A stretch of DNA of 64,000 nt from Fimbriosthenelais zetlandica (lineage: Eukaryota): assembly GCA_977030845.1 (NCBI GenBank), contig OZ365113.1:34596001-34660000 (forward strand). Direction: 5' to 3'. The notes beneath the pieces are model-generated. The model had not been told where the DNA came from, made no database searches, and saw only the letters and a list, made by a program, of their open reading frames with translations. A program made the translations under genes and the position numbers. Positions 9,561 through 35,800 of the stretch are shown one piece after another. Each line of letters opens with the position of its first letter. Positions within the stretch are counted from its first letter, which is position 1.

Positions 9561-12500
9561 TGAGTTGAGTTGACTCCATTTCCCTGAAGACCAGGCGTCT
9601 TCCTGTATGTACACTCTATTACGCACATTGGATATTGCATGTATATCATACATGGTATGCTTGACAATGTGGCAAAATCTGTTGAAGATTCCATAATAGT
9701 GAATCCCAGCCCACTTGCCTATAATAAGGAGTATGGGTTCTTATTCAAGCTGTATACTTAGTGGGGAAGGTGTGGAGGAAGCCTCAGGGGAACACTGAAA
9801 CCTCTTACAGGAAGGGTGGCTAGAACAATAGACCTTACACTCTCTCAGTTGCTTTACGAGTGCAAAGAGGCCAGAAAATAACAGGTAACACTAAAACAGT
9901 GATCTCTTGCTCACTCACTGAGGCAGAGTAATGGCTAATTTGGCTGAGTAGGTGGATATATGTGCTGATTCCACCTGAATGTCTTATATCTTATCAGTCA
10001 TTTCATTCTGATTCCTTTCTCGTAGGAAGAGTAGAGGATATGAGCATTTTCGGCATCGACGTGATCTAATAGTAATGCTGCTTGTGGGGAGTATATTAGA
10101 ACTGCAGAATCGCAGAATTGGAAAAATTATATGATAGAGAACATCTCTCATTGATATCGAGAGTTAGTATTGTCCACAATTCCAAGATAATATGATGTGA
10201 TATTTCTTAAAGAAAAACTGGATTACAAGCATGTCTTCATAAAATATTCTAAACTCTGGTCGCACCCATAGAACAAATGACCATGATTAAGTCTAACCAA
10301 TGATGAATGACATAAAACATTATAATGATGATGGATGGACCGAGGGCAAATCCTTTTGTAAATATTCTTTTGGCTAAAAAGGAACTCCATCTCATTGGGA
10401 GAGCTTGAACTTTTTCAGGCACTTCTCATTTTGATCCCGGCTAATGTAGCATGGTGGGGTAATGCTCTTGAATGAAATGAGAAGTGTGGTCAGGATGGAA
10501 GGGGCAACTCTGTGATCTAGTCTCAATCACTCGCGGGTATTAATCCTCAACAAGAAATCCTCCCATGTCTCACGCTTGTTGATTCGGAACTACACAGTTC
10601 TTGGTAAAACTATCCCAAGGCGAAGGAAGCCGGACTATTTCTGGACATCATTTCATGAAATACAAAAACCGGTTTCTGCTTAAAAACCTGTTTCTGACTT
10701 CATTAAAATGATGGAAGCTTTGAAAAAAATGAGGAGAAAATCCTGACGTCTCAATGAAGGTAGGAACTAGTTGCAATACATGTATTGTGAATTTGATTCA
10801 AACAATTAGGGAAATTGCTATAGGGAGAAAGTGGTTCCAGCATGTTGTTAGATTTATCTGAATATGGCCATTCTACCGTGAGAAAATTGTTAAAATAAAG
10901 ACCTTTAGGAGTAATTGTCCCAACAATTGGGAAAACGCCCTTTGGTCATTATGGGAATATATACCCCTTATCACACTCCCACAAAGTCTGTATGATCGTC
11001 GTCTATCTGAGGCCCAGCTCCCTCAGAAATCACCGATTTATTCTTAAGTCCACTGAGCCATGAAACCTTACTCCAGTCTTTGCTTCTTCCGTCCTAAAAC
11101 TAGGCCCCTGGGCAGGTCGTCTTAAACCTGTCGGGAATAGCCTAATCAGATTAAAATCTTCCGCGGTGATATAGAGGAATAAATGAGGCAAAAACAGCAT
11201 TCTTAGACCATCTCAATTAGGAACGCTTCAGGATGAAGGCTAGAGAAAAAGGAGGGGAGGTATGCATTGGGGACTGCCTGGTGGAAGGCATATAACGATG
11301 TTGGTCTAAAAAAGGTTTTCAGACTCCTTATAGTCAGCCGATGGCGCTAGCAACTCGCCTTATCAACACAGGTTCTGACCCCAACTTCCGGTGCCACTTC
11401 CGGTCTGCGGCAGGCAGTGAATCGCTGTGAGAACAATTAGAGACCGTTTTGCTCCATGCTCCCATTACCCGGAAGCGGAAGCAGTCACGATGGACAAGTC
11501 CCGCAGAAAGAGGAGACAGCAGGTCCGCAGCTACAAGCCGACATTGGCCCGGGCCTTGTCACGTTCATTAAAGTTTAGCTAGGGTAAATTCTAATCTGTG
11601 TGGAGAAGGGATGGGCTGGGTGGAGTCGGGATCTACCGCTAGGATGAGCGTGTGTGTACCCTTCTGGGCAGAGGATCCACGTCTTGGATTACCCAGGCCT
11701 GCGAGTCGTGCGCGGGGTCAGCAGGTCGCAGCAGGTGGCTTGGATTTGGTGAATTTGACTGAGATAAATGAGAAATGGGAGGTTCAGGAGCCTGATAGAT
11801 GCTCGCCAGGTTCATGTGGGCCCTGAGTTGAGGTCAACAGTGGAAAGGGCCAGCAGCCTGGGCTGTATTGTGCATTTAATATGGGGCTGGGAAAGTGAGA
11901 GCTAGGTGCCAGCACTCTATGTCATGCCAATGCAATTAATGGTGCAGGCCAGCTATGGGCTAAAGGATAAAACTAATGGATTTTCTCCTAAGCTGGAAGG
12001 GTAGGGAGCCATATACAGGTACAGCTAGGAGATGGTGGAAGAGGCTATAGTGAATAAAAGGGCGCATAAAGACCAAAACAAGAACACATGTATTATATTA
12101 TGATATTATACACTTATTCACTGGGATACGTTTTCAATTCATTTTTTTTGTATATGACAGTTTGGGTTCTACTGTCCCACAGCAAAAGGCTCTCATTTTA
12201 TTTAACTTGAATTATTCTTAAGCTTAAATGAGGCGTTTCGAAAATTTCAGGGAGATGGCTCCCTTCAAGACAAGAGTGTCTCATATCAGATCTTTGTCGA
12301 TCAATCTTTAATTTCCGACCATACCTCTTATCTAAAGAAATGATAATTCCACTCGTTGAGCCTAGCCTTATCACCGCCAACACCTGATAGCCTATCATGT
12401 GTGGAAGTCATTCAGCCTTTCATTTCTTTCACCTAACTTTAGCATCGTCCGTGTAAAAAGCACTAGGCCTTTGTTTGCCCGATGGCTTGGAAAAAGCCCA

Positions 12501-19883: not shown

Positions 19884-20150
19884 CGCCTCGGGCGATCTTC
19901 CTTGCCCATGTTGCTTCTGGTAGTGGAGTCGGAGCCTATCCTTTATGTCTTGCAGGCATTGACAGTTGTCCTTGGGTACTTGGTATTTCTCCATCAACAA
20001 AAATCCCTCCCAGACCTCTTTAAGGTTGGTCACTTCTTCCAGAGTCAGTAGTGACCCCAGGCCCCCCTGGGCCGAGGCCCCACTGACCCTCCTCATGGGG
20101 CTGAGACGTTTAGGCGATGATAGGATATTTGAGGGATATCCTGTGGACAT
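19884..20150 (-). CDS. Orphan coding exon (89 aa) homologous to the N-terminal module of the dynamin-kinase gene; downstream exons not identified
   Basis: GCCACCATG Kozak start preceded by an in-frame stop, an upstream acceptor (tttgtctctag, about 20326), an open frame and a phase-0 gtaagt donor at 19883. Aligns ungapped with the exon at 22100-22297 (12/51 identities plus many conservative pairs). Confidence 0.55.
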
Positions 20151-20879
20151 GGTGGCCCACTTTTACTTTGCCTGCATCAAAGCCCACTTTGCCTACACCA
20201 CTTAGGGCTGCTGGGTTGGCCAGTGACTTGTTCCACGCGGCCGGGGCTCTCCTATCTACCGCCGATCTCTCCCACACAGGTTGAAGAAGAGGGAAGTAGA
20301 TTCTTGCTGACTTGACTATTTGGGCCTAGAGACAAAGATATTCACTGGCAACTGAGCTGATTTTAATTGCACTGATTAGCTGAAAGAAAACGGTCATAGA
20401 ATGTCAATGAAAGGGCTGTGTAACAAAGAGTCCTCTTCAAATGGCAACATCAATTGTGTTTGATTGCAAATGGGAGGATGAATCAATGCTAGCTCTGTTT
20501 ATATCTAACTAATTATCCCAGAGTCAAGAGCAATAAGTGCCATGGATTATACGATGGAAGAAAATGCCAAAGGAAGGCAATTTGTCTTAAATGCCACAAC
20601 GGTGACAACGGTATGATATAGATCAAGCATGGTAAAGCGTAACATGTGTATGACAGAATTACAAGGCCATATTTACCAGCAATAGTATGCGTGTCCTTCT
20701 TGTCGCTCCACACCTCAGATCTCTCTCCTTGAGGCTAATGTTTTTGTGCTGTCGTTAAACACAGAATGTAATATATTAACCATAAGCGACACTATGATAT
20801 TAAGCTAGTCAAGCAGGCCGTTTGTGTTAAGCCGGGGATGTGTGAGCAGTTCGCCCGAGCCACTCGCGCTCTACATCTT

Positions 20880-21500
20880 ACTCCAGATCCTATGCTTGGT
20901 GGTCGTGCTGATGAAGATGGAAGTCAGGCACAAATTCAGGCTTGCCTCTCTGTCTCATGCTGTCAAACCCAACCACTGTCCTTCCCCGAGTGACAAATGC
21001 CTGCCGTGTCACTAGATTGCCTTGGAAACCACAGCCTCTTGTCATCCGATAGTCTCAACTGTGGCGATGTCACATTGTTGTAGTCACTGCCTCTCTAATG
21101 AGTGCTTACGTCCCGGGTTTTCTCTGCAAGAGCCTCTGAGCCTCTCTGACCATGGAGTGTATAGTGAGCTGCTCAGACAGTTGTCCTCATTGTGAGGGTG
21201 GGAGGTAGACCACTGCTGCCACCCTGTGTCCAACATGCACACACTAATACATAAGGGTTTGGAGGAGTGTGTCTGGAGTGTTAACCCTGCACGATCCTAG
21301 GCCTGCCAGCAGTCCCACCCAGCAATATTGAAGCCAGCTTCTGCTGCTGCTGTTGCTGCCAGGACTCAGCTAGCTTCCCAGCTGCTGCTTGTGCGGCATC
21401 TGTTGTGGGAGAGCAGGTTGGTTGAGCATATAGCGGAGAGCAGCGCTGGATAGAGGGCAATGCAGGCACACTGCCACCATGGCAGATTGTTGTCCTCCTA
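20880..21500 (-). mobile_element. Decayed non-LTR retrotransposon (LINE) fragment, APE-endonuclease region
   Basis: Minus-strand translations across stops and frameshifts give KLASILLG, VAAVVYLPP, GSDYNNV (GDFN-like) and FVTRGRT (TRG..TLD-like) in the order expected for LINE ORF2 endonucleases. No RT motifs were found. Confidence 0.5.
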
Positions 21501-21819
21501 CCCACAACTCTGTAAGCTTACTTCCCTCCTTCAAGAGCAGCTGCTGGAGCAGATGGAGAGCAGATGGATAAACCCAGCAGCAGCCACTGCAAAATGGTTG
21601 GAGAGCAGACAAATCGATAATGTCCAGAAAGGAACCCAACATGCGTGTCTCTTGCGTGTCCCATTCATAGTCTTTAGTACAAAAATCTCCTATAAGGTCA
21701 TGGCAATCAGACCATCCGTCCGGAAAGCCAAAACCTGTTACATTTTAAACCTTTCCTCTGATATTTATGATTTATTCTATGATTAGTTTTACACGAGCAT
21801 GAGAAGCCATGGGTGAGCC

Positions 21820-22110
21820 GCTTCCGGACGGTAGTGAGCCGTGTCGTCTGCAAGTGGCTTCCCCATCGTCAGGCCTTGGCGGGAAGAAGTGACGGTAGCC
21901 GCTTCATCCAACTGCTGCTAACAAAAGCAGCCGTCCCTTATATCAGTGACAGTGTGGAGGATATCAGAAGGAAAACCCACCCCCGACTGCTATATTAAAG
22001 GCAGAACAACAGCCCAAACATCCACACACCTTCCTGTTTCCGGTCACATCTGGACCCCCCCAGTTCTGCTTCCAATGTTGCAGGAAACTGCTCAAAAAGA
22101 TGGCTGCTCC
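21820..22110. promoter_or_regulatory. Putative promoter of the dynamin-kinase gene, possibly bidirectional
   Basis: ETS-type cores (gcttccgg near 21827, tttccggt near 22038) and an AAGATGGCTGC YY1-like motif overlapping the ATG at 22100. Confidence 0.4.
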
Positions 22111-25100
22111 ACGATGTGGCGATGCGGGCCTTACAGAGGACAGTGTTAATGAGATCACAGATCTATTCCAGGCCTTCCAATGGATACAGAAGCTGGATAT
22201 CAATCCCTCAGGGATTACAGATATAGAAGGAGCCAAATGCAGGCTGCTGCAATATCTCCAGGAACAATATGGTGCTGGAAAACACCAACGTGCAGACGTA
22301 AGTTCACTCTGACACCATTACTACTACATCTTACTTCACAATCGCCATGTCACAATATCCCATCAAGGCCATCGCTTACATGTTCTCTCTCATTTCCTAC
22401 TGTAAACATCAAAACATATCAACACCAATATACCCACCACACTTTATATATAGATTGAGGAAGCAGGCCAGACTATTTGTCATTGTACAGTAGTGGCTTC
22501 CATATCGGTGTAAATATAGAAGCCATTATATATATAGAACCCAGCGGGGTATTTAAAGGTGCTGAATATAGCTCTCCTGATGCACATTAATGCAACAGAC
22601 AGGAACTATACTGGGGTATCCTAACGATTGGATGAACATAAAATCTCAATTTTATGGGATCTAGGGATTTTCAATTTCACAGATTTTTGTCTTTTAGTTA
22701 AGGCTGAACCAGATTTATCACATTGAACGTGATTGGTGATGCAATTAGCCTTCAATATGCCTGACCAATGGTAGGCTTTCCAATTCTTAGTAATATGTAT
22801 TATAAATTGAATGATTCGGGCACATAATGGTAGAAACCATATTATATTAATGGGATAATGATCAAGGTTTTTGGGGATACCATTTTATTGGCTGTCACAT
22901 GTTCCAACCCGGTGAGTCGACTGTTGCTGTCAATGGTAGTGTCAGACAAGGGGGCGGCCATCTTGGATTTAGTACCAGACATTGCCCTCAGCGTCTCTCT
23001 CATCGTGCAGATCGTCTGAAGAACTTGCCGCCTGTGAAGCCAATTAATCACGGAATAATGTCAAATCTATGCCCAGCTACAGTTGCATTGTCACATGCCA
23101 GGAAAATGTTTTATGATTCAGTTCTATTCAGAGTTACATGAATTCAAATCCCATTGTCTGGCTTCAGGTAGAAGCCATCTGGTTTGAACTGATCGTTCAT
23201 ATCACTTTTCATATACTACTGATGATAATAGTGGTAATAATAGTGAAACCAAATTCTGCCAATTATTTTCCTATGATTTGTGTAATTGCTTGAATCTTCA
23301 GTCTCGTTAGAAAAGGTTTATTCCCATAGATTATGAGCCCTACTACATTGACATAATGGGTTATTTCTCTATAGTTTTCCATCGGTTTGGAAATGCTTTG
23401 AGTGATTTCGCATTATCTCAACTCTCCCCACTCTCTCGACAGTATTCTTCCATGAACTTTCCCTTATACATTGTGGAAAGTTCAGTAATAAAACCCATAT
23501 ATAATGATGGTCGAGAGTGAGATGTGGGTTACGCATTAAGATGTCATCCTCATCCTCCCGTCATGTTTAATATGACACCATGTCTTTAGCCCCGTTAAAG
23601 CGACATCTCTGCTCTTATCACGAAGCAAAAATAGAAAAAAACCTGACAACCTCTCAGTTTTAACGTCACTCTGCCTTATCTGACATGACCTGGAATCCAG
23701 GAGAGCTTAAAAATAGAACAATATGTGCCTCCGAAAACTTTGACATGATTACTTGTCGAAAGATGAATTGGAAGGTGTTTTTCAATGTGGCGGCAGGGAT
23801 TCTAAGCCTGGCCTTGTCTGATGGCTTTATTTTTTCTCTCACATGAACACGGTGCCTCGTTTTACTCGGCAGGTGTCCGCCATAATGAAGGAAGTCCTGG
23901 ACAAAGACCGCCAGCTGCGCACGCAACTCATTGACCTTTATAGACAGGTGGAGACCTACGTCATTCAACTTCCGGTGTCGCGGAGAAAAGAGCTGGAGCA
24001 GAGTATTCCCGCGGTGGGTCAACAGATCCACGACAATGTCTGTAACCTGGAGCGGAGCGACTGTCACATATTAGTCGCCGGTAATTAGCATGTTTTAATT
24101 GGAAACTTATCTATGGCTAAAATATTAATGAGTGTCCCGTAAAAATGAATAAATATTCGATTGTTTAACATAATAAAGATGATGCTTCTCTGCTTTATAT
24201 ATTTGATAACTGGTAAAGACTTATTATACATACATAGGCTTTTAAAATAACATAGTGAAAAGATCAATTTGAGACATTTTCTAGGACATAATAGTCTGGG
24301 AAGGTCTTGTTTCCTTTAAAGCAATTTTCTTATGAATGAGCTGCTCAGGTGGAAGACAGAGCTCCATATCTTTATATGAGGTAAATATTAGAATACTGTG
24401 TAGATCTTTGAAGAGAGACGATCAGTGTCTGTGATTTCTTTCCTGACAGGTGAAGTATCTGCTGGCAAGTCGAGCCTGCTAAATTTAATCCTGGGAATAG
24501 ATTTATTACCTACCTCCCTGCTCAGCTGTACATCAACCATCTGTGAACTGAGGTAAGTCTCTTTTCTATCTCTTTCTCTCTCTCTCTCCCTCTCCCTAAA
24601 CCTACCCCTCGATCCCTCTCTCACTCAATCCACCCCTTCCTGTCTCTTTCCCATTTCTCTCCCTGTAGCTCCCTCCCACTATCTGTGTGTGTGCCTCTCT
24701 CTCCCGCCCCTCCATGTTTCTTTATTCTCAGGTGGCAGGATAAGGATCCCCTTTGCACTTTCATAGCGTGACTTCTGACTTTCCCTTGCGTGATCCCGAG
24801 TCACATGTCCCTCTGTTGTTTCTTTCTTTCTCAATTTTCTTATGAAGTTGGGTTCGGTTTACCCTTATCACAGGCTTGCAGTGGCAGTGGCATATTTTGC
24901 CTTGGGCAGCAAGATTTCTTACGAAGCAGCATACATGTTGCACCTTTGAATTCCCCTAAATTGGGATTCCCCAGACACAAAAACATACATTACATGGTCT
25001 TGGTTAGACTCCGCTAGATATCTTTTGATACTTCCTGTTGAAATGAACACATATTTAGCAGACCTAACCTACATTATATGGTAACTAATCTAATTATCTA

Positions 25101-28100
25101 TATATATCTATAGACATATGACCTGGGTCAATTAAATATCCTACTAATTTTGATTTTTATCTCACAGATATGCCTCTTCCAAGTATGCTTTGGCATATTC
25201 TGTGGATGCCAACCAACCCGCAGAAAGAGTGTCTCTGGACTCGGGCGATCCTGCTGAAATCTTAGCCAACTATGTTCATCACAGAGGCGACAGACTTTCT
25301 AAATTCCCATACAAGCGTGTCGAGATCTACTGGCCATTCCCTCTCCTACAGGTAACCATTTATATAGGACTCATTTCATAATATAAAATATGAGAATAGA
25401 TTATGAAACGGGCAAAGGATCACCTGTGAAAATGGGGACTGGGTTCTATTGATTTTCCTCTGGATGCAGCCCTGAGTTGACAACAGACCCCAAATAGGCT
25501 TAGTGGACTATGTTAAGTTAATCATCTAATATAATGTTGTACAGGGTGGAATCGTGATCGTAGACAGCCCTGGTATCGGGGAGAGCCGGGATATGACACG
25601 GGTCGTCAAGGAGTTCCTACCATCAGCCTTCGCCTTCATCTATGTTATCAATAGCAGCAATGCTGGCGGTCTCCAACCAGACCGGGTAAGTACATGATAC
25701 AACATTAACATGATCAATAGAATATGATAATTTAGCCTCGGGCGTTTTTCGCAGTTTTCCCACAGACATAACATGAGAGGATCAAACTAAAAAACGGACC
25801 CCTAGCTCGTAAAAATATACTAAACTAATGGTCTTCTGGTTTTCAGCTTCAAGATTTACTGGCTCAAATTAGCCGTCAAAATGACGATAACTCCGCCTTC
25901 AACCCCCGGTCGGCCATCTTTGTTTGTAACAAGTGGGACCTTGTGCCCCTGGAGGAAGTGGATCAAGTGAGGAATGACACATGCGCAAAGCTGCGCTCCT
26001 GCTGGAGTGGCGTTCATTCTTCACAGATTTTTGAAATGTCAACCACCAAGGTGAGGTTAAAGGTTATTTTTAGGGTTCATAGATGCCCTGGAAAATCCTG
26101 AGAGGCCCTGGAAAACAAGTCAGACTCATGAAAAAAGATTTGGACCTTGATCTTGGAAAAATTCAATTATGTGATGGAAATGCCCTGGAATTGTGGTTCC
26201 TCTGACACTACGAACCCTGTCCTTAATTCACAGATCATTACCCCTTGTTAAATTGTATGATTGTGTTCCAATTAATGATATTTTTACAGATAATCTTCAA
26301 GAAATAGGACAGGTTATTACATGAGAAATCGTAATAACAATATATTACATTTGCACTGCTCTGATCAGTGAAGTTCTGTTTGCTTTCAGGCCAGTAAATC
26401 ATTGAAGGAATCAGATTACGTCACTCAGGATCTGGCTCATTTACTAGAAGGCATAGAGGCTCTGCTTCCAATCAGCCTCAGATGCAAGCTGGAGGTCCAC
26501 TACAGGTAAAGGAAACATTATATTATGTACCTGAGGTTGAATATCTCACCTTAAATGCATCTGTCCCTTGTTGATGTGTCCCTGCTCAATTTGACCTGAA
26601 AGTTCTGAAACCCTTTGACTTTCTTGAAACTTAGTACATTCATAATAGTTAAATTTATTCCAGCAAATAGCTGATTTCAGTATAACTATTGGAGTATGCA
26701 TATTTAGGGGGAGGGGAGTTCGCTTGGTTAGTTAGAGATTTAGGGGGTTGCCATTTAGGGTTGGCGCGGTTCAATCCCCGACCTGTCCAAAGCATTTTCA
26801 CGGCCTCCTTCTTCAGGGTGTTGGAAACGTTGAACTTTTATACATTCTATTTTCACCTTCAAAATGTCATTATAATTGTAGATGGTTAATCCAGCTGCTT
26901 CGCCGCTCGGCCTTCTACCTTCGCGTCCACATTGCTAACGAGACGCGTTCTGACGAGGAACGGAAGGAACTGACGGAACATCTCACCAACCAGCTCGACC
27001 GACTTCACACCGAGGCTAACCGGGTCATGGCGGAACTGAAGGCCGAGGTGTACGAGCGTGCGCAGAAAGCCTGCGACGATCTCATAGCACACCTGGATGC
27101 GCCTGCTACAAGGGCTAGGCTGCTGCTATGGCAGGTAATATTGCATCCATGTTTTCCTTTGACATGCATGCATAGAACTTGGTATCGTTGAATTTATTTT
27201 TTAAATGTGCTAGAATTTTGAGAACAAGCCCAGAGAAATTGACTTGTGATATTTTAAGGTAAATACATATTACTTGAAACACATGAAATGAACATTGCAC
27301 TGTAAATTTAGGGATGACCTAATAGGATGAATGTGATTTCATTTAATAAACGTTAAGAAATACATACTTGAAATTGCTCATGGCCTCAATTGCCTCTCTA
27401 ATTGCTAATGATTATATTTGGCGAATATAGAATGATCGTGTCGCTATAAAACCAGCAGTGGGAACTTGTTTAGCGTTGACAATAGGTGACTTTGATCTGT
27501 GGGCGTGTGATTTCATTGTACAGGAGAGTGAATGCCCTGATGGCAGTGACTGGGAGGCACTCCAAGAGCTGCTCATCGCCAAGGTCAATAAGAGAATCAG
27601 ACGCGAGGTCAATGACTGGGATCAGAGGAACGGGGTCTTCCAGGTAAATAGTTCATCCCTTCTCACAACATTGCTTTTTTATGGGAGGTATTTGGGAGGT
27701 GTGTGGCGGGGGAGTTCATATTACGGATAGAAAACCTCGTTAATCTGCCAGTGTATTTCCAGTTAAGCCTGCTGTAACTATGCATTGCTGTTTGCTACTA
27801 ACAATTAGCACTGTATTTCAAATTTCATTCATTTTGTTTCAACATTTGGTTCTAAATGCATGCCCATTTACTGCTGCAAAATGTATTGCTCTATCAGAAA
27901 TTAATGCATTCTCATTGAAGGAGCATTTTGCTCGATCACATGCCATGCATGAGAGATTGTTACATCGATGTCTCATTATATTCACTAGGAGATTCAGATG
28001 AGCATGCTCCACAAGTTCCAACAGGAGTTTGAGCTAATGGAGGACCAACTGGGCGTCATTGAGGGTAACATGATCGGCTCCCGTTGTTCGAGAATTGACA

Positions 28101-30682
28101 CCCACGCCGCGCTGCGACAAATGCACCTCCAGCAGCGACCCAATCTCACCACAGGTCAAAAAATAGCACTTGGTATGGCTGCCCCCATCCTTCTCCCACT
28201 CGGGGTGGTTGCCGGATTTTTTGTTCTTCCAGTTGCCGGCGTTCGAGCGATAAGGAACAAACTAAGTGAGATGAAACTACTGAAAAGTTACAGAGAAAAC
28301 AAAGAGAAAACCTTAACCACAATGACTCAGGAGATATTGGACAGTTTCATTGAAAAGAGTGCACTCTCTCGTCTGATTAGGGAACAATTGCAGGTCGTGA
28401 CTGCCAACATGGAAACAATGCTTTCCAGTATACCTAACATTGTAGCTGCAGATCGAATACTCATAGAACGGTTACAAAACGAAAGGAACCAATCAGAGGT
28501 TGCCTTAGCTGAACAACTATTACCCATGTATCAAAAATGCATTGAGCACCAAGGAAGACTAGATTTATTTTATGCCGAAAAGATTAGGACTTATGATGTG
28601 GATATGGCGGATTTACAGTGGGATCCCTCTAGGCCACCTATTGCCTCAGGCACTTTTGGTGATGTTTACGCCGGACTGTGGAAAAATGGAAATGATAATG
28701 AAATACCCGTGGCTGTAAAGTTACGCAGAGAAGTGCTGGACCAAAGCAATATTACTGAGCTATTGATAGAGGAAGAAAACCTGAAGTAAGTTCACTTTTG
28801 TTACATCCAAGCTCCCATAATGAATGTTTCAGAGAACACAGACTTGACGGTTTTATTTTGTGACTAGTGTCTATATTATTGCTTTTGAAGGACCCACGGT
28901 CTTGTATTTGTGAAGGACCTTAGGTCCTGTATTTGGGAAGGCCAATAGGTTCTGTATTTGGAAAAGACCTCAGGACCTCAGAACCTTGAGTAGGTTCTGT
29001 ATTTTGGAAAGGCCCTTAGGTCCTGTATTTGGAAAGGAGCTACCTTAGCTAAAAGATACAATTCAAAATCTTTTGGTAGGCCCCATACCAGTCCTGATCT
29101 AATCATTTTTCCTTTTTATACTTCAGGAGACTCCATCATGAAAATATAGTTAAATATTTTGGGACCTGCGCACGCAGACAGGAACCTGAAGGTCCCCTTC
29201 AGATCCTGATGTTAATGGAGAAATGTGAAAGCACTTTACGTGCACGTATCATCGGAAAGAAGGCCAAGAGCCCCGGTAAACTGGGCGACAACAAAGCCAT
29301 GATGCTCGAGGCACAAAGACGTGTACGCAGCTACTGCAGCCAGCTATGTGCAGCTTTAATGTACATGCACGAACGTGGCTTAGTACATAGGGATCTCAAA
29401 CCGCAAAATATACTGGTAAGGTTCTGATTATTTCTTCTAAAACTATGCATTCCATACATTAAATATAACATGGGTTGAAAATCATGAATATCGCGTTTTG
29501 TAAATGAAACGAAATATTTGATTTTCTGATCTGCACATAGAAAAATTGAAGTATTGTAGGTTAATTCATAGTTCTAATATATTTAGAATTTGTTGTGTTT
29601 TCAACAGTTAAATGTTGCCTTGCCTGCAGCTCATGAGATGCTAAGATTTCTTTGGTTTATTATTGTAATGGCTATATTCCACTTCAATGTTGTAGAAAAT
29701 GAGGTCAATGACCTAAGGGACCACCTATTGAAATTCAATGAAAGTAAGTTATTAACAAATCTGGAAATATTGCCTGTTAATTCACCATCTTTTATATGCA
29801 CCAATGAAGCCAAAGAAGTCTCAATCCAAGCTTTCTTTTGTCATCTGTAGAAAGGAGTCAAGAAATTGACGTTTGAGCAAATAGGTTACTAAGAAAAATC
29901 AATCATTATTCCCTTCGCCTACTCAGTGAAGTTATTGCCAACTCTAGACACCCCCCCCCCCCCCCAACCCTCCACCAGGTGACTCCAGATAGGCATTTTT
30001 CATTAGGTTTTGTTTTCAGAGGGAGTAGGCCTAAATACATTCTGCTAAAATCCGTTGCATTCCCTCACTCTCTTGCCACACACCCACTCTCACTATCGCA
30101 CCCATTCACTCGCTCAACACCATGGTATACCATCTCTCCAGAAGATTAAAATCTGTGAAATGTTATTTGTAGGTTAATTTTAAATCAACTGAAAGCCCAT
30201 GAAATACATTATGCTACACCTATTCAGTTCCATTCATACCTATATCATAAATATCCAAACTGTCTTAAAGGCTTTTCTCTCATCTTATTTCACAGCTGAA
30301 CAAACTTGAAGTGGTGAAGATAGCCGACGTGGGTTTAACCAAACCAGAGCGGGATATATCTGGAACTATCTGTGGTACCACTGCCTACTCCGCCCCAGAA
30401 GTCATGGAAGGCATTTCATATGACAAAGCAGCCGACATGTACAGTTTCGCCATTATCGCCTGGGAGTTATGGTACGGTAGGGGAGTGGGCGATGAAATTC
30501 TCTCCCTCCAGAAGGGGAACATTGAGACGGCCATCAGATCGGGAGCGAGGCCGAGATTCAGTGCGCATGCGCCGAGCACTGAATGGCGGGATGTGATTGA
30601 ACTGTGTTGGAACTGTGACCCAAGGAAAAGGTTGACTGCCAAGCAGTCGTACGACTACTTCACTAGCCTCAAAGATATATGA
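22100..30682 (+). CDS. Dynamin-like (mitofusin/BDLP-type) GTPase fused to a C-terminal protein kinase, DSTYK/Dusty-like architecture; 12 exons, 999 aa
   Basis: Exons with GT-AG ends and consistent phases: 22100-22297, 23873-24080, 24450-24552, 25168-25351, 25545-25685, 25847-26050, 26390-26505, 26882-27134, 27524-27643, 27989-28785, 29127-29415, 30296-30682 (sum 3000 nt). GTPase motifs: G1 GEVSAGKS, G2 region SCTSTICE, G3 DSPG, G4 NKWD. Kinase motifs: ASGTFGDVY, VAVK, HRDLKPQN, DVG, GTTAYSAPE, DMYSF. Linking exon 1 to exon 2 is inferred from matching phase-0 splice sites. Confidence 0.9.
28887..29037. repeat. ~25-bp degenerate tandem repeat in intron 10 of the dynamin-kinase gene
   Basis: gaaggaccttaggtcctgtatttgg-like unit, 5-6 copies. 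Confidence 0.8.
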
Positions 30683-32846
30683 AACATATCCAATAGAACA
30701 ATGATGATATCATTTAATTATTGTACATTTATTAATTGAATTATATTCCTCGCGCATATTTTATTACTTATCATAAATTTACAACATTCTGCTGAAGTTG
30801 TTTTCCCCTTCATTTTTTACAAGGCCTATTTTATCATTTTATATTTTGTTATTAATAACTCATCGTCTTTCAGTTGATACATATAGCTTGAAGCCATTTG
30901 TTTTTGTTATCAACCACGTGATGTATTCTGTCTATATTGAATCTTAATTCATTATTTAATGAATAACTTTATGATCTGCGTTCAAAGAGTATTTTGCTGA
31001 TCTTACCATTGCTGTAGCATTTCCCCCAAGATTTAATTCTTCATATTTTAAATTGTATATTTGTGCATATTGAAAAAGGATGCAATCTTCAGCGCGAAAA
31101 TATTCTTAACACTATTACGAATTGCTAAGCATTAGATCGTAATTTTGTTATGTTAAGACGGCATCACATTAGTCAGATTTTCGTTATAATTTACTTTATA
31201 AGTACAACTAGCTTTTGAAAATAGGAGCATCTGCAAAGTTAAACACGAACCTGAGACAGATGCTCAAGTAAGACCTAAGAGCAATGTTTAACACAATACT
31301 TTAACCTTTGGAGGAAATCCATGCATGTCCATAAGACTTTAGTCGATTAAGTTGCTGGGCTCGAAAACATTGGAGTGTGGATTCATTATTTCTGGTTACT
31401 TTACCTTCTGTGGTCAAGACACTTTTTGAGGTTCAACCCTCTGTTGAGTCGCTTTGTGAACCAGTGTTAATTCATTACTATTGTTTGTATATATGTGTGC
31501 CAAATAATACATACAACAAAACTGTATTATATAAAGGTGCTGTTAACTTTAGCTATAATGTGAAATAAACAACTGAATGTCAGTTGTAATCTAAATGTTA
31601 AAACTCAATGGTTTTATAACCATTATCTATTTGCTACGCATATGATAAGGCAACTGTTGCCATGATGGGAGATCTCATTAATCCCATACCTGTTATCAGT
31701 TATCGCTACCTGCGATTATCAGCATGTCTTCACATGCATATGGCTAAACTTACAAGGTTACATCTTTCTAACATTATCGTCTACTTTTAGGAAATGTTGT
31801 AAATGGAATTGCTTCATCACGAAGAAAAAAACACTAGTTTTTAGATTTTTTTTATATGTCGATAGCCTCTATACTATTATAGCAGTCGTGTGATGTAATG
31901 TAAATGTACGCAGAAGACTCAATGTGATAGCCTATAAATCTGATACAATCCTGTAGACTCATTACTGATAAGATAGTGTATGCACTGAATATCCTGTCCA
32001 TTCCCGAGCTTTCAGGATAGTAAACTTAGAACTAATTCCAATTATAAAATCTTGAGAAGATGTGTAATTTTGCCGTGTAGTTTGTTGGTTCCGAAGGTTT
32101 GAAATGCACTGTTGGGTCTCTTTTTAGTCTTGGATAATAATAACATTTTTCTAAATCATTAATTTATTGTGTAAGGAATTGTTACTATGGAAATCTTTTT
32201 GATAGAAAACTGGGGTAAAGCTTGGAGAATGCCTTCTTACGCAATTGTTGCTTGTTGTAATGATATGGGATATAAATGCTTTCATTTAAAACAAAACGTT
32301 TTTATTCATTTATTTAGTTTATCCGAATATTTAATATTGGTAGAAATGTCTAATATACAGGTATTTTATTTATTTAGTTCAATATAGTGTGTCAATAATC
32401 CTGGTCACTTTAGATGTTACAAGGGTTATTTTTTTTATCCAGGTATGACATTCCTTATCAGTCATATTTATCTGAACCCAGGTTAGTTTTGGTGCACTTA
32501 TATAATAGGGGACAACTTTCCAAATGTTCTACCTATATTTCCTGATATATTTTGATCATATCTACCCTTTATTAAGTATACTTGACCGTGGCTTTCCATA
32601 CTATTTTTCTTTCTATATCATTTAAAAACTATCCTTCTACATGTAGTTAGTTCCATCGTTTTTCTTTCTGATAATTTTTGTTTTCAGATTATCAGGAGGT
32701 ATGATTAATTTTTGTGGAGTGCCCTCCACTTAGTTAGGATCACCAGGACGTCAACCTCTATATCTGTAGCTTATATTTAGTTCATCAGATCTAGTATTAA
32801 TCTTTGTGAAGCAGCTGACGTTCCCACACACACCTCTACAGCAAGC

Positions 32847-35800
32847 ATGCCTCTACTACCGGGTGTCCAGGACGGTGAGTTACCTTATACATCTACATTA
32901 TATACATTATACATTATAGGGAATCAAACGCGTCTACCATAGGGAATTTATAGGGAACAAACCCCTCTTCCATAGGGAAACCAGAGGGTATCATTCGCGT
33001 CTACCATGGTACCATAGGGAATAATCTAGAGGGTATTAGACGGGTCTATCATAGCCCTCATATAGGCCTACATATAATTATGTATATCCAGCGACTGTTT
33101 AGATTAATGTAAAATACATTATCTGTTCCTCAAGGTGATGTCACCAAAGCAGCCGACCCACAGGATGAGGTGACAGGTAAGTTAAATTTGTCTCCAGTAT
33201 CTTTATGACCATGTATTATGATAAAATATATACTACTCGGAGGAAGATGTTTCTGCTATACCACTTTTGGTTGGGGTCTGATTCCAGGTACATTCAGAGT
33301 GAAGTCTGGTTTAGCCCAGATGGTCAAAGGTGGGGTGGTCATGGATGTGGTCAACGCTGAACAGGCGCGTATCGCTGAGGAAGCTGGGGTAGGTTCTGTA
33401 CTTTGAAAAAACAAATTTATTCACATAGATGTAAAACGTAGGACCTTACGAAAGTTCTTAGGACGTCATTGATGGGTCCAGAGGTGTCTTCCACGCCTAG
33501 AAATGGCCAGAATCTTTTCTTACTCTTCAGGCATGCGCTGTGATGGCTTTGGAGAGAGTTCCTGCTGATATTAGAAAGGATGGTGGTGTGGCCCGTATGG
33601 CAGATCCTAAGGTAATTTGCCATGATTTTAGACAATTATTTCATTAAATTTGTAGCCATTGGTTACCCTTGGCGGGGTACCCATTGCTCAGTCAGGAATA
33701 ATTAAAAGGTCCCGAAGGACGAAGTCAAACAATTTACAAAAATAAATGTAATACAGGAAAAAACTTTACTTGTAGATGATCAAGGAAATCATCAACACAG
33801 TGACCATCCCTGTGATGGGGAAAGCCCGCGTGGGACATTTTGCAGAGGCTCAGATTTTAGAAGTTCTAGGAGTAGATATGGTTGATGAATCCGAAGGTAA
33901 GATATGATAAGATTGGAACATGTGAACAGATATGCACATTTATGCAGGACTAATCTACAGTAAAGTCTGTATCACAACACTCTAATCAAGATACCATTTA
34001 TAATTACTATCTTACATTTTGTAACAGTATTGACATCGGCTGACGCAGAAAACCACATAGATAAGCGCCGGTTCAAGACGCCATTTGTGTGTGGAGCTAG
34101 GAACCTGGGTGAGGCCCTGAGGAGAATAGCCGAGGGTGCTGCCATGATCAGAACCAAAGGCGAGGCAGGAACAGGTAAATTACATGTACTCACAATTTTA
34201 TGATAAAGTTTCTTTCCCTCTCAATATTGACATGATTCGTGACGATGATTAATCATATACGGGGTTGCCTCTTCAAAATTTGTTTAAAAGGTTTTGGATG
34301 GGGGGGGGGAGAACCGTCTTTCTACTGTTTCTTAATCCTGAAAAAAATCCAGAGATCACTGAATGATCAAGGCACTTGGTCTTGTTGTCAGGTAATGTGA
34401 TAGAAGCAGTGCGACATGCTCGTCGTATCAGGAGGGAGATAGCCCTGGCTCAGGCCATGGATGAGACAGAACTCTACTCTTATGCCAAACAACTCCAGGT
34501 TCCTCATGATCTCCTGCGACAAACTGCCAAAATGGGCAGACTCCCTGTCGTCAATTTCGCTGCTGGTGGCATTGGTAGGTATAAATTTGTATCATACAAG
34601 AAAATATCTATTTGTATAATATTGAATGAAAGTAAAATATGTATAGTGCATTTAGGAATGCTACAGAGATATTACGGAGATAACGTAGACTGTTTATGCC
34701 TATACATACTACATGTATGATTGAACATCGCGCCCCGTTACGATACTAAGAACTACTAAGGCGCCACCCTCGGCTGTAGTAGGAACTAAAGCTCAGACCT
34801 CTATTATCGCTCACAACAACGCTACTTCTTTCCTCTCGCCATTTCCATAAATCGTAGCTCTGTTCTTTTATATGTGATGAATTCTCCATGTAAATCTACC
34901 GACTGATTTCAATTTTAAGCCATTTAGGAATTGTATTTGATCTACAAACGTCGTCTGAAAATTCTGAGCGACGCCCCATTCACTCAACATTGAGCATTAG
35001 TTCCCACGTTTGCCGTATTGGTCGAGAGGGAGCCACCAGACTGTCAACTTTAATTCACCGTAGAGTTTATACTAGTCGCGCAGTTGAGAGCACCGACCCT
35101 TCGGCCAAATCCCCTATTATCGGTCACAACAAAACCGCATGCCGTTTATAGGATTACACACAGTTTACCTCTGTTATTTTGCATGCCATGAATTTTTCAT
35201 GAAAATCTACCTAAGGATTTTAATTTTGGTTTATGTGGTTGCTTTCATAAATCTATAAACGCCGTCTGGAAATTCCAAGCGACGCTCCATTGATTCAGCA
35301 TTGGCGGTTAGTTCTCAGTTTAGCCGGTGGTGGGGTAGTAGCATGAGGCCGAAAGAACTAACCTCAGTTCATTCCTTTGCCGTATAGATCGGGAGGGCGC
35401 CACCGGACAATTCCTTGTAGAGTGTTTATAAGTAGCGCAGTTGCGAGCACTGACCGATCGGCCAAATCCCCTATTATCGGTCACAACAAAACCGCTTGCC
35501 GTTTATAGGATTTAACACAGTTTACCTCTGTTATTTTGCATACCATGAATTCTTCATGAAAATCTACCTAAGGATTTTAATTTTGGTTTATGTGATCTTA
35601 TGTGGGTGCTTTCATAAATCTATAAACGCCGTCTGGAAATTCCAAGCGACGCTCCATTGATTCAGCATTGGCGGTTAGTTCTCAGTTTAGCCGGTGGTGG
35701 GGTAGTAGCATGGGGCCGAAAGAACTAGGCCTAACCTCAGTTCATTCGTTTGCCGTATTAGATCGCGCCACCGGACGATCAACTTTAATTCCTTGTAGAG

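What the first reader, a model, noticed from the sequence alone, without database searches (positions are those of the whole stretch)
22100..30682. Mitofusin/bacterial-DLP-like GTPase fused to an apparently active kinase
Seen: complete G1-G4 motifs (GEVSAGKS, T, DSPG, NKWD), helical regions, a hydrophobic stretch and a kinase with the VAVK lysine and HRD. Established: this GTPase motif style belongs to the dynamin superfamily (mitofusin/BDLP branch), and other members of the superfamily (Mx, GBP, some bacterial DLPs) act in antiviral defence; vertebrate DSTYK has a related overall layout. Inference: a membrane-remodelling or oligomerising sensor coupled directly to kinase signalling, a candidate for an uncharacterised invertebrate innate-immune or membrane-damage system.
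Basis: partly seen in the sequence, partly recalled or inferred. Interest (0 to 1): 0.7.

Follow-up and report, generated by a model that had tools for sequence, protein, structure and literature searches.

The report
Membrane GTPase fused to a kinase
This is an intact 12-exon animal gene for a mitofusin/bacterial-dynamin-like GTPase fused to an apparently active protein kinase, one member of an old, unstudied animal family whose degenerate vertebrate relative is DSTYK, and it sits head-to-head with a kinase-dead paralogue in an arrangement also seen in amphioxus and probably in abalone.

Summary
Window 22100-30682 (+) holds a clean 12-exon, all GT-AG, 999-aa ORF. It carries G1 GEVSAGKS, G3 DSPG, G4 NKWD, a Pro/Gly-rich hydrophobic hairpin (aa 568-594), and a kinase with VAVK, HRDLKPQN, DVG and SAPE.

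It aligns end to end (37-39% identity) with about 1000-aa Dynamin_N+kinase proteins of amphioxus, hemichordates, molluscs, corals, a nemertean and a brachiopod. At least 248 database proteins match and none is characterised.

The N-terminal 700 aa of a homologue fold like BDLP and mitofusin (Z 22-24). The full-length model's best Swiss-Prot matches are DSTYK, collinear over the whole length but only 16-17% identical. The gene is therefore a GTPase-competent relative of DSTYK, not its orthologue.

New here: the gene is head-to-head with what is most likely exon 1 of a GTPase-intact, kinase-dead paralogue. The same pairing occurs in Branchiostoma; in Haliotis the neighbour is also a family member, but its clade and kinase state are unresolved. 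A third paralogue has lost both sets of motifs. Against a sister-species orthologue, dN/dS is below about 0.08.

The immune-sensor idea is untested and not favoured. A nucleotide-gated, membrane-anchored kinase on an organelle membrane is the best reading.

The parts
22100..22297 (+). Exon 1 (aa 1-66): start codon and a small helical N-terminal module with no Pfam family.
   Evidence: Gene model. The family N-terminal profile hits it at E 1.8e-8. It aligns from residue 1 with homologues. No Pfam match.
23873..24080 (+). Exon 2 (aa 67-135): long neck helix leading into the G domain. It ends in phase 1 inside the G1 glycine codon.
   Evidence: Profile hit at E 1.7e-11.
24450..24552 (+). Exon 3 (aa 136-169): P-loop G1 GEVSAGKS and the conserved SCTSTICEL segment that holds the G2 candidate T163.
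   Evidence: Pfam Dynamin_N at 2.3e-8. G1 is nearly invariant in 129 family members.
25168..25351 (+). Exon 4 (aa 170-231): variable G-domain insert and strand.
25545..25685 (+). Exon 5 (aa 232-278): G3 DSPG.
   Evidence: Pfam Dynamin_N at 1.5e-3. D, P and G are conserved in 127-128 of 129 members.
25847..26050 (+). Exon 6 (aa 279-346): G4 NKWD.
   Evidence: N in 128 of 129, W in 127, D in 125. NKWD is kept in the sister-species orthologue.
26390..27643 (+). Exons 7-9 (26390-26505, 26882-27134, 27524-27643; aa 347-509): long helices of the neck and trunk bundles.
   Evidence: The AF2 model of homologue P0153 shows helices 359-407, 410-457 and 480-539. BDLP aligns over 521-546 residues.
27989..28785 (+). 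Exon 10 (aa 510-774): end of the trunk, the hydrophobic Pro/Gly hairpin (aa 568-594, 28163-28243), the returning stalk helices, and the kinase N-lobe with the Gly-loop and VAVK (28709-28720). This one exon physically joins the GTPase stalk to the kinase.
   Evidence: The hairpin is 32 of 33 identical in the sister species.
29127..29415 (+). Exon 11 (aa 775-871): kinase alphaC end to the catalytic loop HRDLKPQN (29386-29409).
   Evidence: Pfam Pkinase at 7.8e-14. Motif census.
30296..30682 (+). Exon 12 (aa 872-999 plus stop): DVG (30326-30334), activation loop, SAPE (30389-30400) and the C-lobe.
   Evidence: Pfam Pkinase at 2.3e-14. The best PDB sequence hits are Roco4, TAK1 and MLK, that is the TKL group.
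19884..20162 (-). Divergently oriented family-type first exon (ATG near 20150, donor after ...SPEA). It is most likely exon 1 of the GTPase-intact, kinase-dead paralogue, whose remaining exons lie at G000:C19:34540699-34553602 on the minus strand. That would make the first intron about 62 kb.
   Evidence: The family N-terminal profile hits only four places in 134 kb: one E1 and one E2 on each strand. Splice phases fit. Best blastp hits are the N-termini of pseudokinase-clade members. The paralogue's exons cover about aa 61-1000 without stops.
20163..22099 (.). Intergenic region of about 1.9 kb between the two divergent start codons; a putative bidirectional promoter.
   Evidence: GC is 0.484 against about 0.40 nearby, but CpG o/e is only 0.43. 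Promoter function is inferred, not shown.

Best explanation
The locus encodes a 999-aa cytosolic protein that is anchored in a membrane. It belongs to an ancient, uncharacterised metazoan family.

The parts, in order, are:
- a small N-terminal helical module;
- a BDLP/mitofusin-class dynamin GTPase with intact G1-G4;
- two helical bundles (neck and trunk) with a conserved Pro/Gly-rich hydrophobic hairpin at the trunk tip;
- a C-terminal TKL-type Ser/Thr (possibly dual-specificity) kinase with all catalytic residues.

Vertebrate DSTYK is the degenerate relative of the same architecture. It is structurally collinear over its whole length, but Pfam does not recognise its G domain.

Proposed mechanism (inferred, not shown):
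1. The hairpin inserts into one leaflet of an organelle membrane. By analogy with DSTYK the endolysosomal membrane is the leading guess.
2. GTP binding drives G-domain dimerisation and the closed-to-open stalk change known for BDLP and mitofusin.
3. This tethers or remodels membranes and at the same time brings the kinase domains together for trans-activation. Kinase output is then gated by nucleotide state and membrane state.
4. The head-to-head paralogue (GTPase intact, kinase dead) is the likely obligate partner. The model for this is bacterial DLP pairs and kinase/pseudokinase pairs.
For: Shown:
- Clean gene model, with the stalk and kinase joined in a single exon.
- Dynamin_N and Pkinase hits.
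- End-to-end collinearity with at least 248 database proteins from six phyla.
- G motifs nearly invariant in 129 full-length members. 93 keep both motif sets and 29 are GTPase-only pseudokinases.
- Profile against PDB: BDLP 1.5e-22, CjDLP 9e-16, MFN2 2e-14.
- AF2 model of homologue P0153 with pLDDT 86 and pTM 0.84.
- Foldseek and VIA: BDLP over 521-748 aligned positions, Fzo1/MFN Z 23-24.
- DSTYK entries are the top 16 full-length hits, and the DSTYK N-terminus [2-634] matches the N-terminal model alone.
- ESM feature neighbours outside PF00350 are DSTYK clusters carrying Pkinase only.
- The hairpin pattern SPxWxPxG...LPxxG is conserved and 32 of 33 identical in the sister species. dN is 0.147 with dS saturated.
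- The head-to-head pseudokinase partner is present here and in Branchiostoma. In Haliotis the head-to-head neighbour is also a Dynamin_N+Pkinase gene, but its kinase state is unknown.

From papers:
- DSTYK sits on late endosomes and lysosomes, and its overexpression fuses and enlarges them (PMC6981171).
Against: - There is no expression or protein data. No sequencing runs were listed.
- The structure is of a 39%-identical homologue, not of this protein.
- The hairpin region has low pLDDT (below 50), so its membrane topology is inferred from hydropathy and from the stalk helices pairing on both sides of it.
- The G-domain dimer prediction gave no verdict.
- The neighbour's exon 1 to exon 2 link needs a 62-kb intron and is unconfirmed.
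- The target membrane, the substrates and any GTPase-kinase coupling are all analogy.
- DSTYK sequences could not be fetched, so no joint tree was built.
Confidence: 0.55

Rival explanations
1. One reading: an innate-immune or membrane-damage sensor. Oligomerisation of the dynamin-like part on a damaged or pathogen-containing membrane switches on the kinase to start defence signalling.
For: - DSTYK phosphorylates STING S366 at late endosomes, and knockout mice are more susceptible to a DNA virus (PMC11933320).
- The family is strongly expanded and clustered in amphioxus and corals.
- One coral member carries an N-terminal HEPN_DZIP3 domain.
- The N-terminal region hits the LeoA and LeoBC models of the bacterial Eleos defence system at 1e-9 to 1e-13.
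- Mx and IRG relatives appear lower in the fold and profile lists.
Against: - This genome has only three family loci, each in a different old clade.
- Against the sister species, dN/dS is below about 0.08 and the motifs and hairpin are conserved.
- Conserved head-to-head microsynteny across bilaterians is typical of core cell biology, not of arms-race genes.
- The LeoA hits reflect general BDLP homology.
- No induction data exist.
Confidence: 0.2
2. A mitofusin-like organelle fusion or tethering factor. The GTPase does the work and the kinase domain only regulates or scaffolds locally, with no downstream signalling role.
For: - The G motifs are far better conserved than the kinase motifs. 29 of 129 members are pseudokinases with an intact GTPase, and a whole old clade is kinase-dead.
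- DSTYK overexpression fuses late endosomes and lysosomes.
- The fold matches fusogenic and tethering DLPs best.
Against: - 93 of 129 members, this gene and its sister-species orthologue all keep every catalytic kinase residue.
- The DSTYK kinase has a real substrate.
Confidence: 0.15
3. It is simply this organism's DSTYK orthologue, one that happens to retain the GTPase motifs.
For: - DSTYK is the best full-length structural match.
- NCBI names many family members 'DSTYK-like'.
- The nearest ESM clusters are DSTYK.
Against: - It is only 16-17% identical to every DSTYK, including those of sea urchin and honeybee. Family members from cnidarians to chordates share 28-39%.
- DSTYK-type clusters without Dynamin_N also exist in molluscs, where the family is present as well.
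- The family has several old clades.
Confidence: 0.07
4. A gene-model artefact: two neighbouring genes, a GTPase and a kinase, joined by my splicing.
For: There is no transcript evidence for this genome.
Against: - Exon 10 is one uninterrupted 797-nt exon that encodes both the stalk and the kinase N-lobe.
- More than 100 annotated proteins in other phyla have the same collinear architecture.
Confidence: 0.01

Closest known systems
[quoted passage not shown]
   Same: Same overall architecture and length, collinear over the full model (query 53-995 against DSTYK 2-908, E 5e-29 to 5e-25). Its N-terminal 630 residues also match the BDLP-like N-terminal model on their own. The kinases are of a related type, and DSTYK clusters are the nearest ESM neighbours. 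DSTYK acts on late-endosome and lysosome membranes and promotes their fusion.
   Different: Only 16-17% identity. DSTYK clusters carry no Pfam Dynamin_N. From memory, not tested here, its P-loop is degenerate. This protein keeps G1-G4 and a conserved hydrophobic hairpin, belongs to a separate multi-clade family, and comes paired with a pseudokinase paralogue.
Bacterial dynamin-like protein BDLP (Nostoc punctiforme, PDB 2j68/2j69) and mitofusins/Fzo1
   Same: Best sequence-profile hit (1.5e-22) and the widest structural coverage (521-748 aligned positions). Mitofusin and Fzo1 give the top Z scores of 23-24. The order of parts is shared: G domain, neck, trunk, then a membrane-binding element at the trunk tip.
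   Different: Neither BDLP nor the mitofusins carry a kinase. Mitofusins are mitochondrial outer-membrane fusogens with longer transmembrane segments. Here the hydrophobic element is a hairpin of about 27 residues, and a TKL kinase follows the last neck helix.
Bacterial DLP pairs (C. jejuni DLP1/DLP2, PDB 5owv; LeoA/LeoBC of the Eleos defence system)
   Same: Homologous G domain and stalk. Like these, the animal gene has an adjacent paralogous partner gene.
   Different: The pairing here is a divergent eukaryotic gene pair, not an operon. A heterotypic complex is only inferred. The LeoA and LeoBC hits are modest (1e-9 to 1e-13), and no defence context exists.
ROCO proteins (LRRK1/2, Dictyostelium Roco4)
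   Same: The same functional logic: a GTPase that dimerises and a TKL kinase in one polypeptide. Roco4 is the best PDB sequence hit of the kinase C-lobe (1.1e-11), and LRRK1 appears in the fold list.
   Different: The GTPase here is a dynamin-superfamily BDLP type, not Roc-COR. There are no LRR, ankyrin or WD40 repeats. This protein is membrane-anchored by its own hairpin.

Membership tests
Dynamin superfamily, BDLP/mitofusin class | G1 GxxxxGK[ST], G2 Thr, G3 DxxG and G4 [NT]KxD motifs, with a match to Pfam Dynamin_N. | tested here: met
   GEVSAGKS, T163, DSPG and NKWD are present. Dynamin_N scores 2.3e-8 and 1.5e-3 on single exons and 1e-13 to 1e-25 on full-length homologues.
Dynamin superfamily, BDLP/mitofusin class | The G domain is followed by neck and trunk helical bundles, with the chain returning to the neck. 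| tested here: met
   This was tested on the 39%-identical homologue P0153, not on the window protein. The AF2 model has pLDDT 86. BDLP aligns over 723-748 columns. VIA gives Z 22-24 to Fzo1, MFN and BDLP.
Dynamin superfamily, BDLP/mitofusin class | A membrane-binding paddle or transmembrane hairpin at the trunk tip. | tested here: inconclusive
   A hydrophobic Pro/Gly segment lies at aa 568-594 (Kyte-Doolittle 2.4). It is conserved in the family and sits where the BDLP alignment reaches the paddle region. Its pLDDT is below 50, and insertion into a membrane was not tested.
Dynamin superfamily, BDLP/mitofusin class | GTP hydrolysis stimulated by G-domain dimerisation. | not testable with these tools
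   The dimer prediction gave no verdict. This needs biochemistry.
DSTYK orthogroup | Full-length collinear architecture: BDLP-like N-terminus plus C-terminal kinase. | tested here: met
   Foldseek against Swiss-Prot puts 16 DSTYK entries at the top. With the N-terminal model alone, DSTYK [2-634] scores 1.7e-12.
DSTYK orthogroup | Sequence-level orthology with DSTYK of vertebrates, sea urchin and insects. | tested here: not met
   Identity to every DSTYK is 16-17%, against 28-39% within the family. DSTYK-type clusters without PF00350 coexist with the family in molluscs. No joint tree was possible because no DSTYK sequences were obtained.
Active eukaryotic protein kinase (TKL-like) | Gly-loop, VAIK Lys, alphaC Glu, HRD Asp, catalytic Asn, DFG Asp and APE. 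| tested here: met
   ASGTFGDV, VAVK, the acidic EEE run in LLIEEENLK (alphaC Glu candidate), HRDLKPQN, DVG and SAPE are all present. D[VI]G is the family norm. The best PDB hits are Roco4, TAK1 and MLK. Catalysis itself was not tested.
ROCO (Roc-COR-kinase) | A Roc GTPase with a COR dimerisation domain. | tested here: not met
   No Roc or COR Pfam hits. The GTPase is Dynamin_N and BDLP-like.
Eleos (LeoA/LeoBC) anti-phage system | LeoA plus LeoBC proteins encoded together in a prokaryotic defence locus. | tested here: not met
   There are only modest HMM hits (1e-9 to 1e-13), consistent with shared BDLP ancestry. This is a spliced eukaryotic gene.

The most novel reading that the evidence does not exclude
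The gene and its head-to-head pseudokinase paralogue form an ancient, pre-bilaterian heterotypic pair of membrane-anchored BDLP-like GTPases. Together they act as a GTP-gated membrane-tethering and kinase-signalling machine on endolysosomal or other organelle membranes. This would be the ancestral, enzymatically complete form of DSTYK. It would explain how DSTYK promotes endolysosome fusion and phosphorylates STING there, and it could be an invertebrate STING-pathway or organelle-damage kinase.
Probability: 0.25. Interest if true: 0.8.

Novelty: new variant of a known kind. Interest (0 to 1): 0.6.

Why it matters
DSTYK is a human disease gene, linked to urinary-tract malformations, spastic paraplegia SPG23 and scoliosis models. 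It is also a reported STING kinase. In the open literature I could search, its large N-terminal region has no assigned fold or mechanism.

This locus belongs to the invertebrate family that keeps the same architecture in a catalytically intact form: a BDLP/mitofusin-type GTPase with a membrane hairpin, joined to the kinase. That gives a concrete and testable model for DSTYK, in which nucleotide and membrane state gate a kinase on endolysosomes. It also adds a GTPase-kinase fusion that is independent of the ROCO/LRRK proteins.

The conserved head-to-head pairing with a kinase-dead paralogue suggests an obligate two-component machine. This echoes the way bacterial dynamin-like proteins work in pairs.

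Tried and rejected
- **Expression.** The look-up of sequencing runs listed no RNA or DNA run for exon 10. Read laying was therefore not used, and neither the splice junctions nor the 62-kb intron of the neighbour are confirmed.
- **G-domain dimer.** Complex prediction with the G domain of P0153 (two copies plus GTP) gave no verdict. It is not evidence either way.
- **DSTYK sequences.** I tried a length-restricted search with P0153:470-1000. It returned family fragments and generic kinases but no DSTYK. No joint DSTYK tree could be built, and the state of DSTYK's G motifs rests on memory plus the absence of PF00350 in DSTYK clusters.
- **Literature.** Seven searches found no paper on the Dynamin_N+kinase family. 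None links DSTYK to the dynamin, BDLP or mitofusin folds.
- **Neighbourhoods in other species.** The look-up of encoding contigs had no record for P0179, P0153, P0052, P0090 or P0251. Octopus and Potamilus show no divergent family exon within 10 kb upstream.
- **Other checks.**
  - No second family member lies inside the window beyond the divergent exon 1.
  - The N-terminal exons match nothing else in the genome at E below 0.01.
  - blastn between the window and the sister-species locus found nothing, because nucleotide divergence is too high. dS is saturated.
  - The intergenic region is not a CpG island (o/e 0.43).
- **Readings rejected.** Mitofusin orthologue: this protein has a kinase fusion, belongs to a distinct family, and the genome has a separate G1-type hit elsewhere. 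ROCO membership: there is no Roc-COR.

Full report
**1. The observation**

Three-frame reading of 22000-30800 shows a chain of open segments on the + strand. I set the boundaries at canonical splice sites and obtained a 12-exon model with GT-AG at all 11 introns. It has 3000 nt of coding sequence and encodes 999 aa, from the ATG at 22100 to the stop ending at 30682.

- G1 GEVSAGKS (aa 136-143)
- a conserved Thr (T163) in SCTSTICEL, the G2 candidate
- G3 DSPG (238-241)
- G4 NKWD (306-309)
- a hydrophobic stretch at 568-594
- the kinase motifs ASGTFGDV, VAVK (750-753), HRDLKPQN (862-869), DVG and SAPE

Pfam on single exons gives Dynamin_N (2.3e-8 on exon 3, 1.5e-3 on exon 5) and Pkinase (about 1e-14 on exons 11 and 12).

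The fusion is not a splicing assumption. Exon 10 (27989-28785) is one uninterrupted exon that encodes the trunk end, the hairpin, the returning stalk helices and the kinase N-lobe with VAVK.

**2. The family**

A library-wide phmmer search with exon 10 found only 192 hits. The full-length hits (about 950-1060 aa) come from Branchiostoma, Ptychodera, bivalves, gastropods, Octopus, Lineus and Lingula. They are all named 'uncharacterized' or misnamed as MAP3K, Fer-like or FGFR4-like.

A search with the Ptychodera protein gave at least 248 proteins and added many corals and octocorals. Several are named 'DSTYK-like', 'mitofusin-like' or 'bacterial dynamin-like'. Each of those I scanned has Dynamin_N at about 130-290 and a kinase at about 730-1000.

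My spliced model aligns over aa 1-999 with these proteins at 37-39% identity, which validates the model.

I counted the motif states in 129 full-length members:
- The G motifs are nearly invariant.
- 93 members keep both motif sets.
- 29 keep the GTPase but have a dead kinase, for example H[AI]ELSLDT with NIG.
- 6 have minor G-motif variants and 1 has lost both.

The GTPase is therefore the constant core, and the kinase is active in most members but not all.

**3. Fold and relatives**

A profile of the N-terminal 700 residues hits these PDB sequences:

| Target | E-value |
|---|---|
| BDLP | 1.5e-22 |
| C. jejuni DLP | 9e-16 |
| MFN2 | 2e-14 |
| MFN1 | 1.6e-13 |
| IniA | 8e-11 |
| SynDLP, Fzo1 | weaker |

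AF2 on the closest named homologue (P0153, with a 93-sequence alignment) gave pLDDT 86 and pTM 0.84. Only the hairpin region (545-606) is poorly modelled.
- Foldseek against PDB puts full-length BDLP first, over 723-748 columns.
- VIA-align on an N-terminal-only model gives Fzo1 Z 23.8, MFN2 23.3, MFN1 23.0, SynDLP 22.3, BDLP 22.2 (521-546 residues aligned), IniA 20.3 and LeoA 16.2.

Against Swiss-Prot models, the 16 best hits of the full-length model are DSTYK from human to sea urchin and honeybee. The alignment is collinear (query 53-995, hit 2-908, E 5e-29 to 5e-25) but only 16-17% identical. With the kinase removed, the DSTYK N-terminus [2-634] still aligns over query 53-699 (1.7e-12 to 4e-11), ranking below BDLP and the mitofusins.

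ESM-feature neighbours, after excluding clusters that carry PF00350, are DSTYK clusters of chordates, molluscs and arthropods. These carry Pkinase only.

I conclude that DSTYK shares this architecture in a degenerate form, and that this gene is not its orthologue.

**4. This genome and the neighbouring gene**

The genome (447 Mb) has three family loci:
- **The window gene**, with both motif sets intact.
- **A multi-exon paralogue at C19:34540699-34553602 (minus strand).** It has GETSSGKS, DSPG and NRWD, but its kinase catalytic loop reads HMELSLDT, so it is a pseudokinase.
- **A paralogue on C10.** Its G1 is degenerate (GDLTSDKN), G3 and G4 are lost, and the kinase reads HYDLSLDS. The hairpin is conserved.

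I tested that lead.
- The family N-terminal profile hits exactly four places in 134 kb of contiguous sequence. On the + strand these are E1 and E2 of the window gene. On the minus strand they are one E1 (the divergent exon) and one E2 (the first detected exon of the C19 paralogue).
- The splice phases fit.
- The best blastp hits of the divergent exon are N-termini of pseudokinase-clade members.
- The paralogue otherwise covers about aa 61-1000 with no stops.

The two paralogues are therefore most likely arranged head-to-head, about 1.9 kb apart, with a 62-kb first intron in the pseudokinase gene. This is an inference, and I put it at roughly 65%.

The arrangement also occurs elsewhere.
- **Branchiostoma lanceolatum.** P0012, which is in the window gene's clade, lies about 500 bp from a divergent P0281-like gene. 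That neighbour has intact G motifs and an SFGLSQDT pseudokinase.
- **Haliotis cracherodii.** P0062, in the same clade, lies about 800 bp from a divergent 1065-aa Dynamin_N+Pkinase gene. The clade and kinase state of this neighbour were not resolved.
- **Octopus and Potamilus.** No such exon lies within 10 kb upstream.

**5. Evolution**

A FastTree of 84 rows gives these placements:
- The window gene sits with its sister-species orthologue (support 100).
- Both sit inside a starred 22-row set (support 97) made of molluscs plus amphioxus P0012 and P0179.
- The C19 and C10 paralogues fall in an 11-row clade (support 100) that the motif census shows to be entirely kinase-dead. The C10 copy is sister to a Lingula protein.

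This suggests the three paralogues belong to separate old clades rather than a recent expansion.

The orthologue in a related species (L014, an ENA assembly) covers exons 6-12 at 79% amino-acid identity. dN is 0.147 and dS is saturated (about 2 or not computable), so dN/dS is below about 0.08. The hairpin is 32 of 33 identical and all motifs are kept.

**6. Mechanism**

What is shown is the architecture, the intact motifs, the fold class, the family's conservation and the gene pairing.

The rest is inferred from established knowledge of BDLP and mitofusin: GTP-dependent G-G dimerisation, a closed-to-open stalk change, and paddle insertion into the membrane. The hairpin would anchor the protein in one leaflet with both enzymatic domains in the cytosol. 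A single-pass topology is unlikely, because the helices before and after the hairpin pack into the same bundles in the model.

Nucleotide-driven dimerisation would tether or remodel membranes and bring the C-terminal kinases together. The pseudokinase paralogue is the likely partner.

The DSTYK papers give the nearest functional analogy. DSTYK localises to late endosomes and lysosomes, and its overexpression fuses them (PMC6981171). It also phosphorylates STING S366 there (PMC11933320).

**7. The immune reading**

Points in favour:
- the DSTYK-STING link
- the expansions in amphioxus and corals
- a coral HEPN_DZIP3 fusion
- the LeoA and LeoBC similarity

Points against, for this particular gene:
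- low copy number
- membership of an old clade shared across phyla
- strong purifying selection
- conserved microsynteny

I rate the immune reading at about 0.2.

**8. Novelty**

The family exists in databases only as unnamed predictions. In the open literature I could search, nothing describes it or assigns a BDLP/mitofusin fold to the DSTYK N-terminus. I file the gene as a new variant of a known kind: a DSTYK / dynamin-superfamily protein with an intact GTPase, a membrane hairpin and a conserved pseudokinase partner.

**Limits**
- There are no transcript data.
- The structural models are of a homologue.
- No DSTYK sequences were obtained for a joint tree.
- The complex prediction gave no verdict.

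Noticed in passing
G000:C10:56078131-56082539 (loci L013/L002; outside the window): This is a third family paralogue with few introns. G1 (GDLTSDKN), G3 (TIPE), G4 and the kinase catalytic loop (HYDLSLDS) are all degenerate, but the hydrophobic hairpin is well conserved. It is a 'double pseudoenzyme', and it is sister to a Lingula protein in the tree.
   Followed up: partly
G000:C19:34540699-34553602, minus strand (loci L004/L010/L005; 42-55 kb upstream of the window start): This family paralogue is GTPase-intact and kinase-dead (HMELSLDT). Its exons run in family order without stops. It lacks only exon 1, which is probably the divergent exon at window 19884-20162.
   Followed up: yes
window 34376-34717 (+): An open frame here has a SOR/SNZ (PdxS, pyridoxal-phosphate synthase) match at 1.6e-16. 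This gene is absent from many animals. It is probably one exon of a downstream gene.
   Followed up: no
window 47520-47915 (-): An open frame with an FHA domain match (5.4e-7). It probably belongs to an unrelated gene on the minus strand.
   Followed up: no
window 24557-24763 (intron 3): A CT/GA-type simple repeat that reads as SLSLSL... when translated. A similar repeat lies upstream of the C10 paralogue (c10 coordinates about 11400-11800).
   Followed up: no
L014:3628-9265 (sister-species orthologous locus): The intron between the exon 8 and exon 9/10 equivalents holds a retroelement ORF (endonuclease plus RVT_1, 930 aa) and a NADAR-domain ORF (473 aa). Neither is present at this position in the window.
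   Followed up: no
P0256 (Oculina patagonica, 1297 aa): This coral family member is annotated with an N-terminal HEPN_DZIP3 domain (1.8e-32) in front of the Dynamin_N and kinase domains. It could be a real domain fusion or a merged gene model.
   Followed up: no
G000:C19:19180248-19180430 (-): A separate hit to the G1 region of the family profile (1.2e-8). It may be this genome's mitofusin or another dynamin-like GTPase.
   Followed up: no
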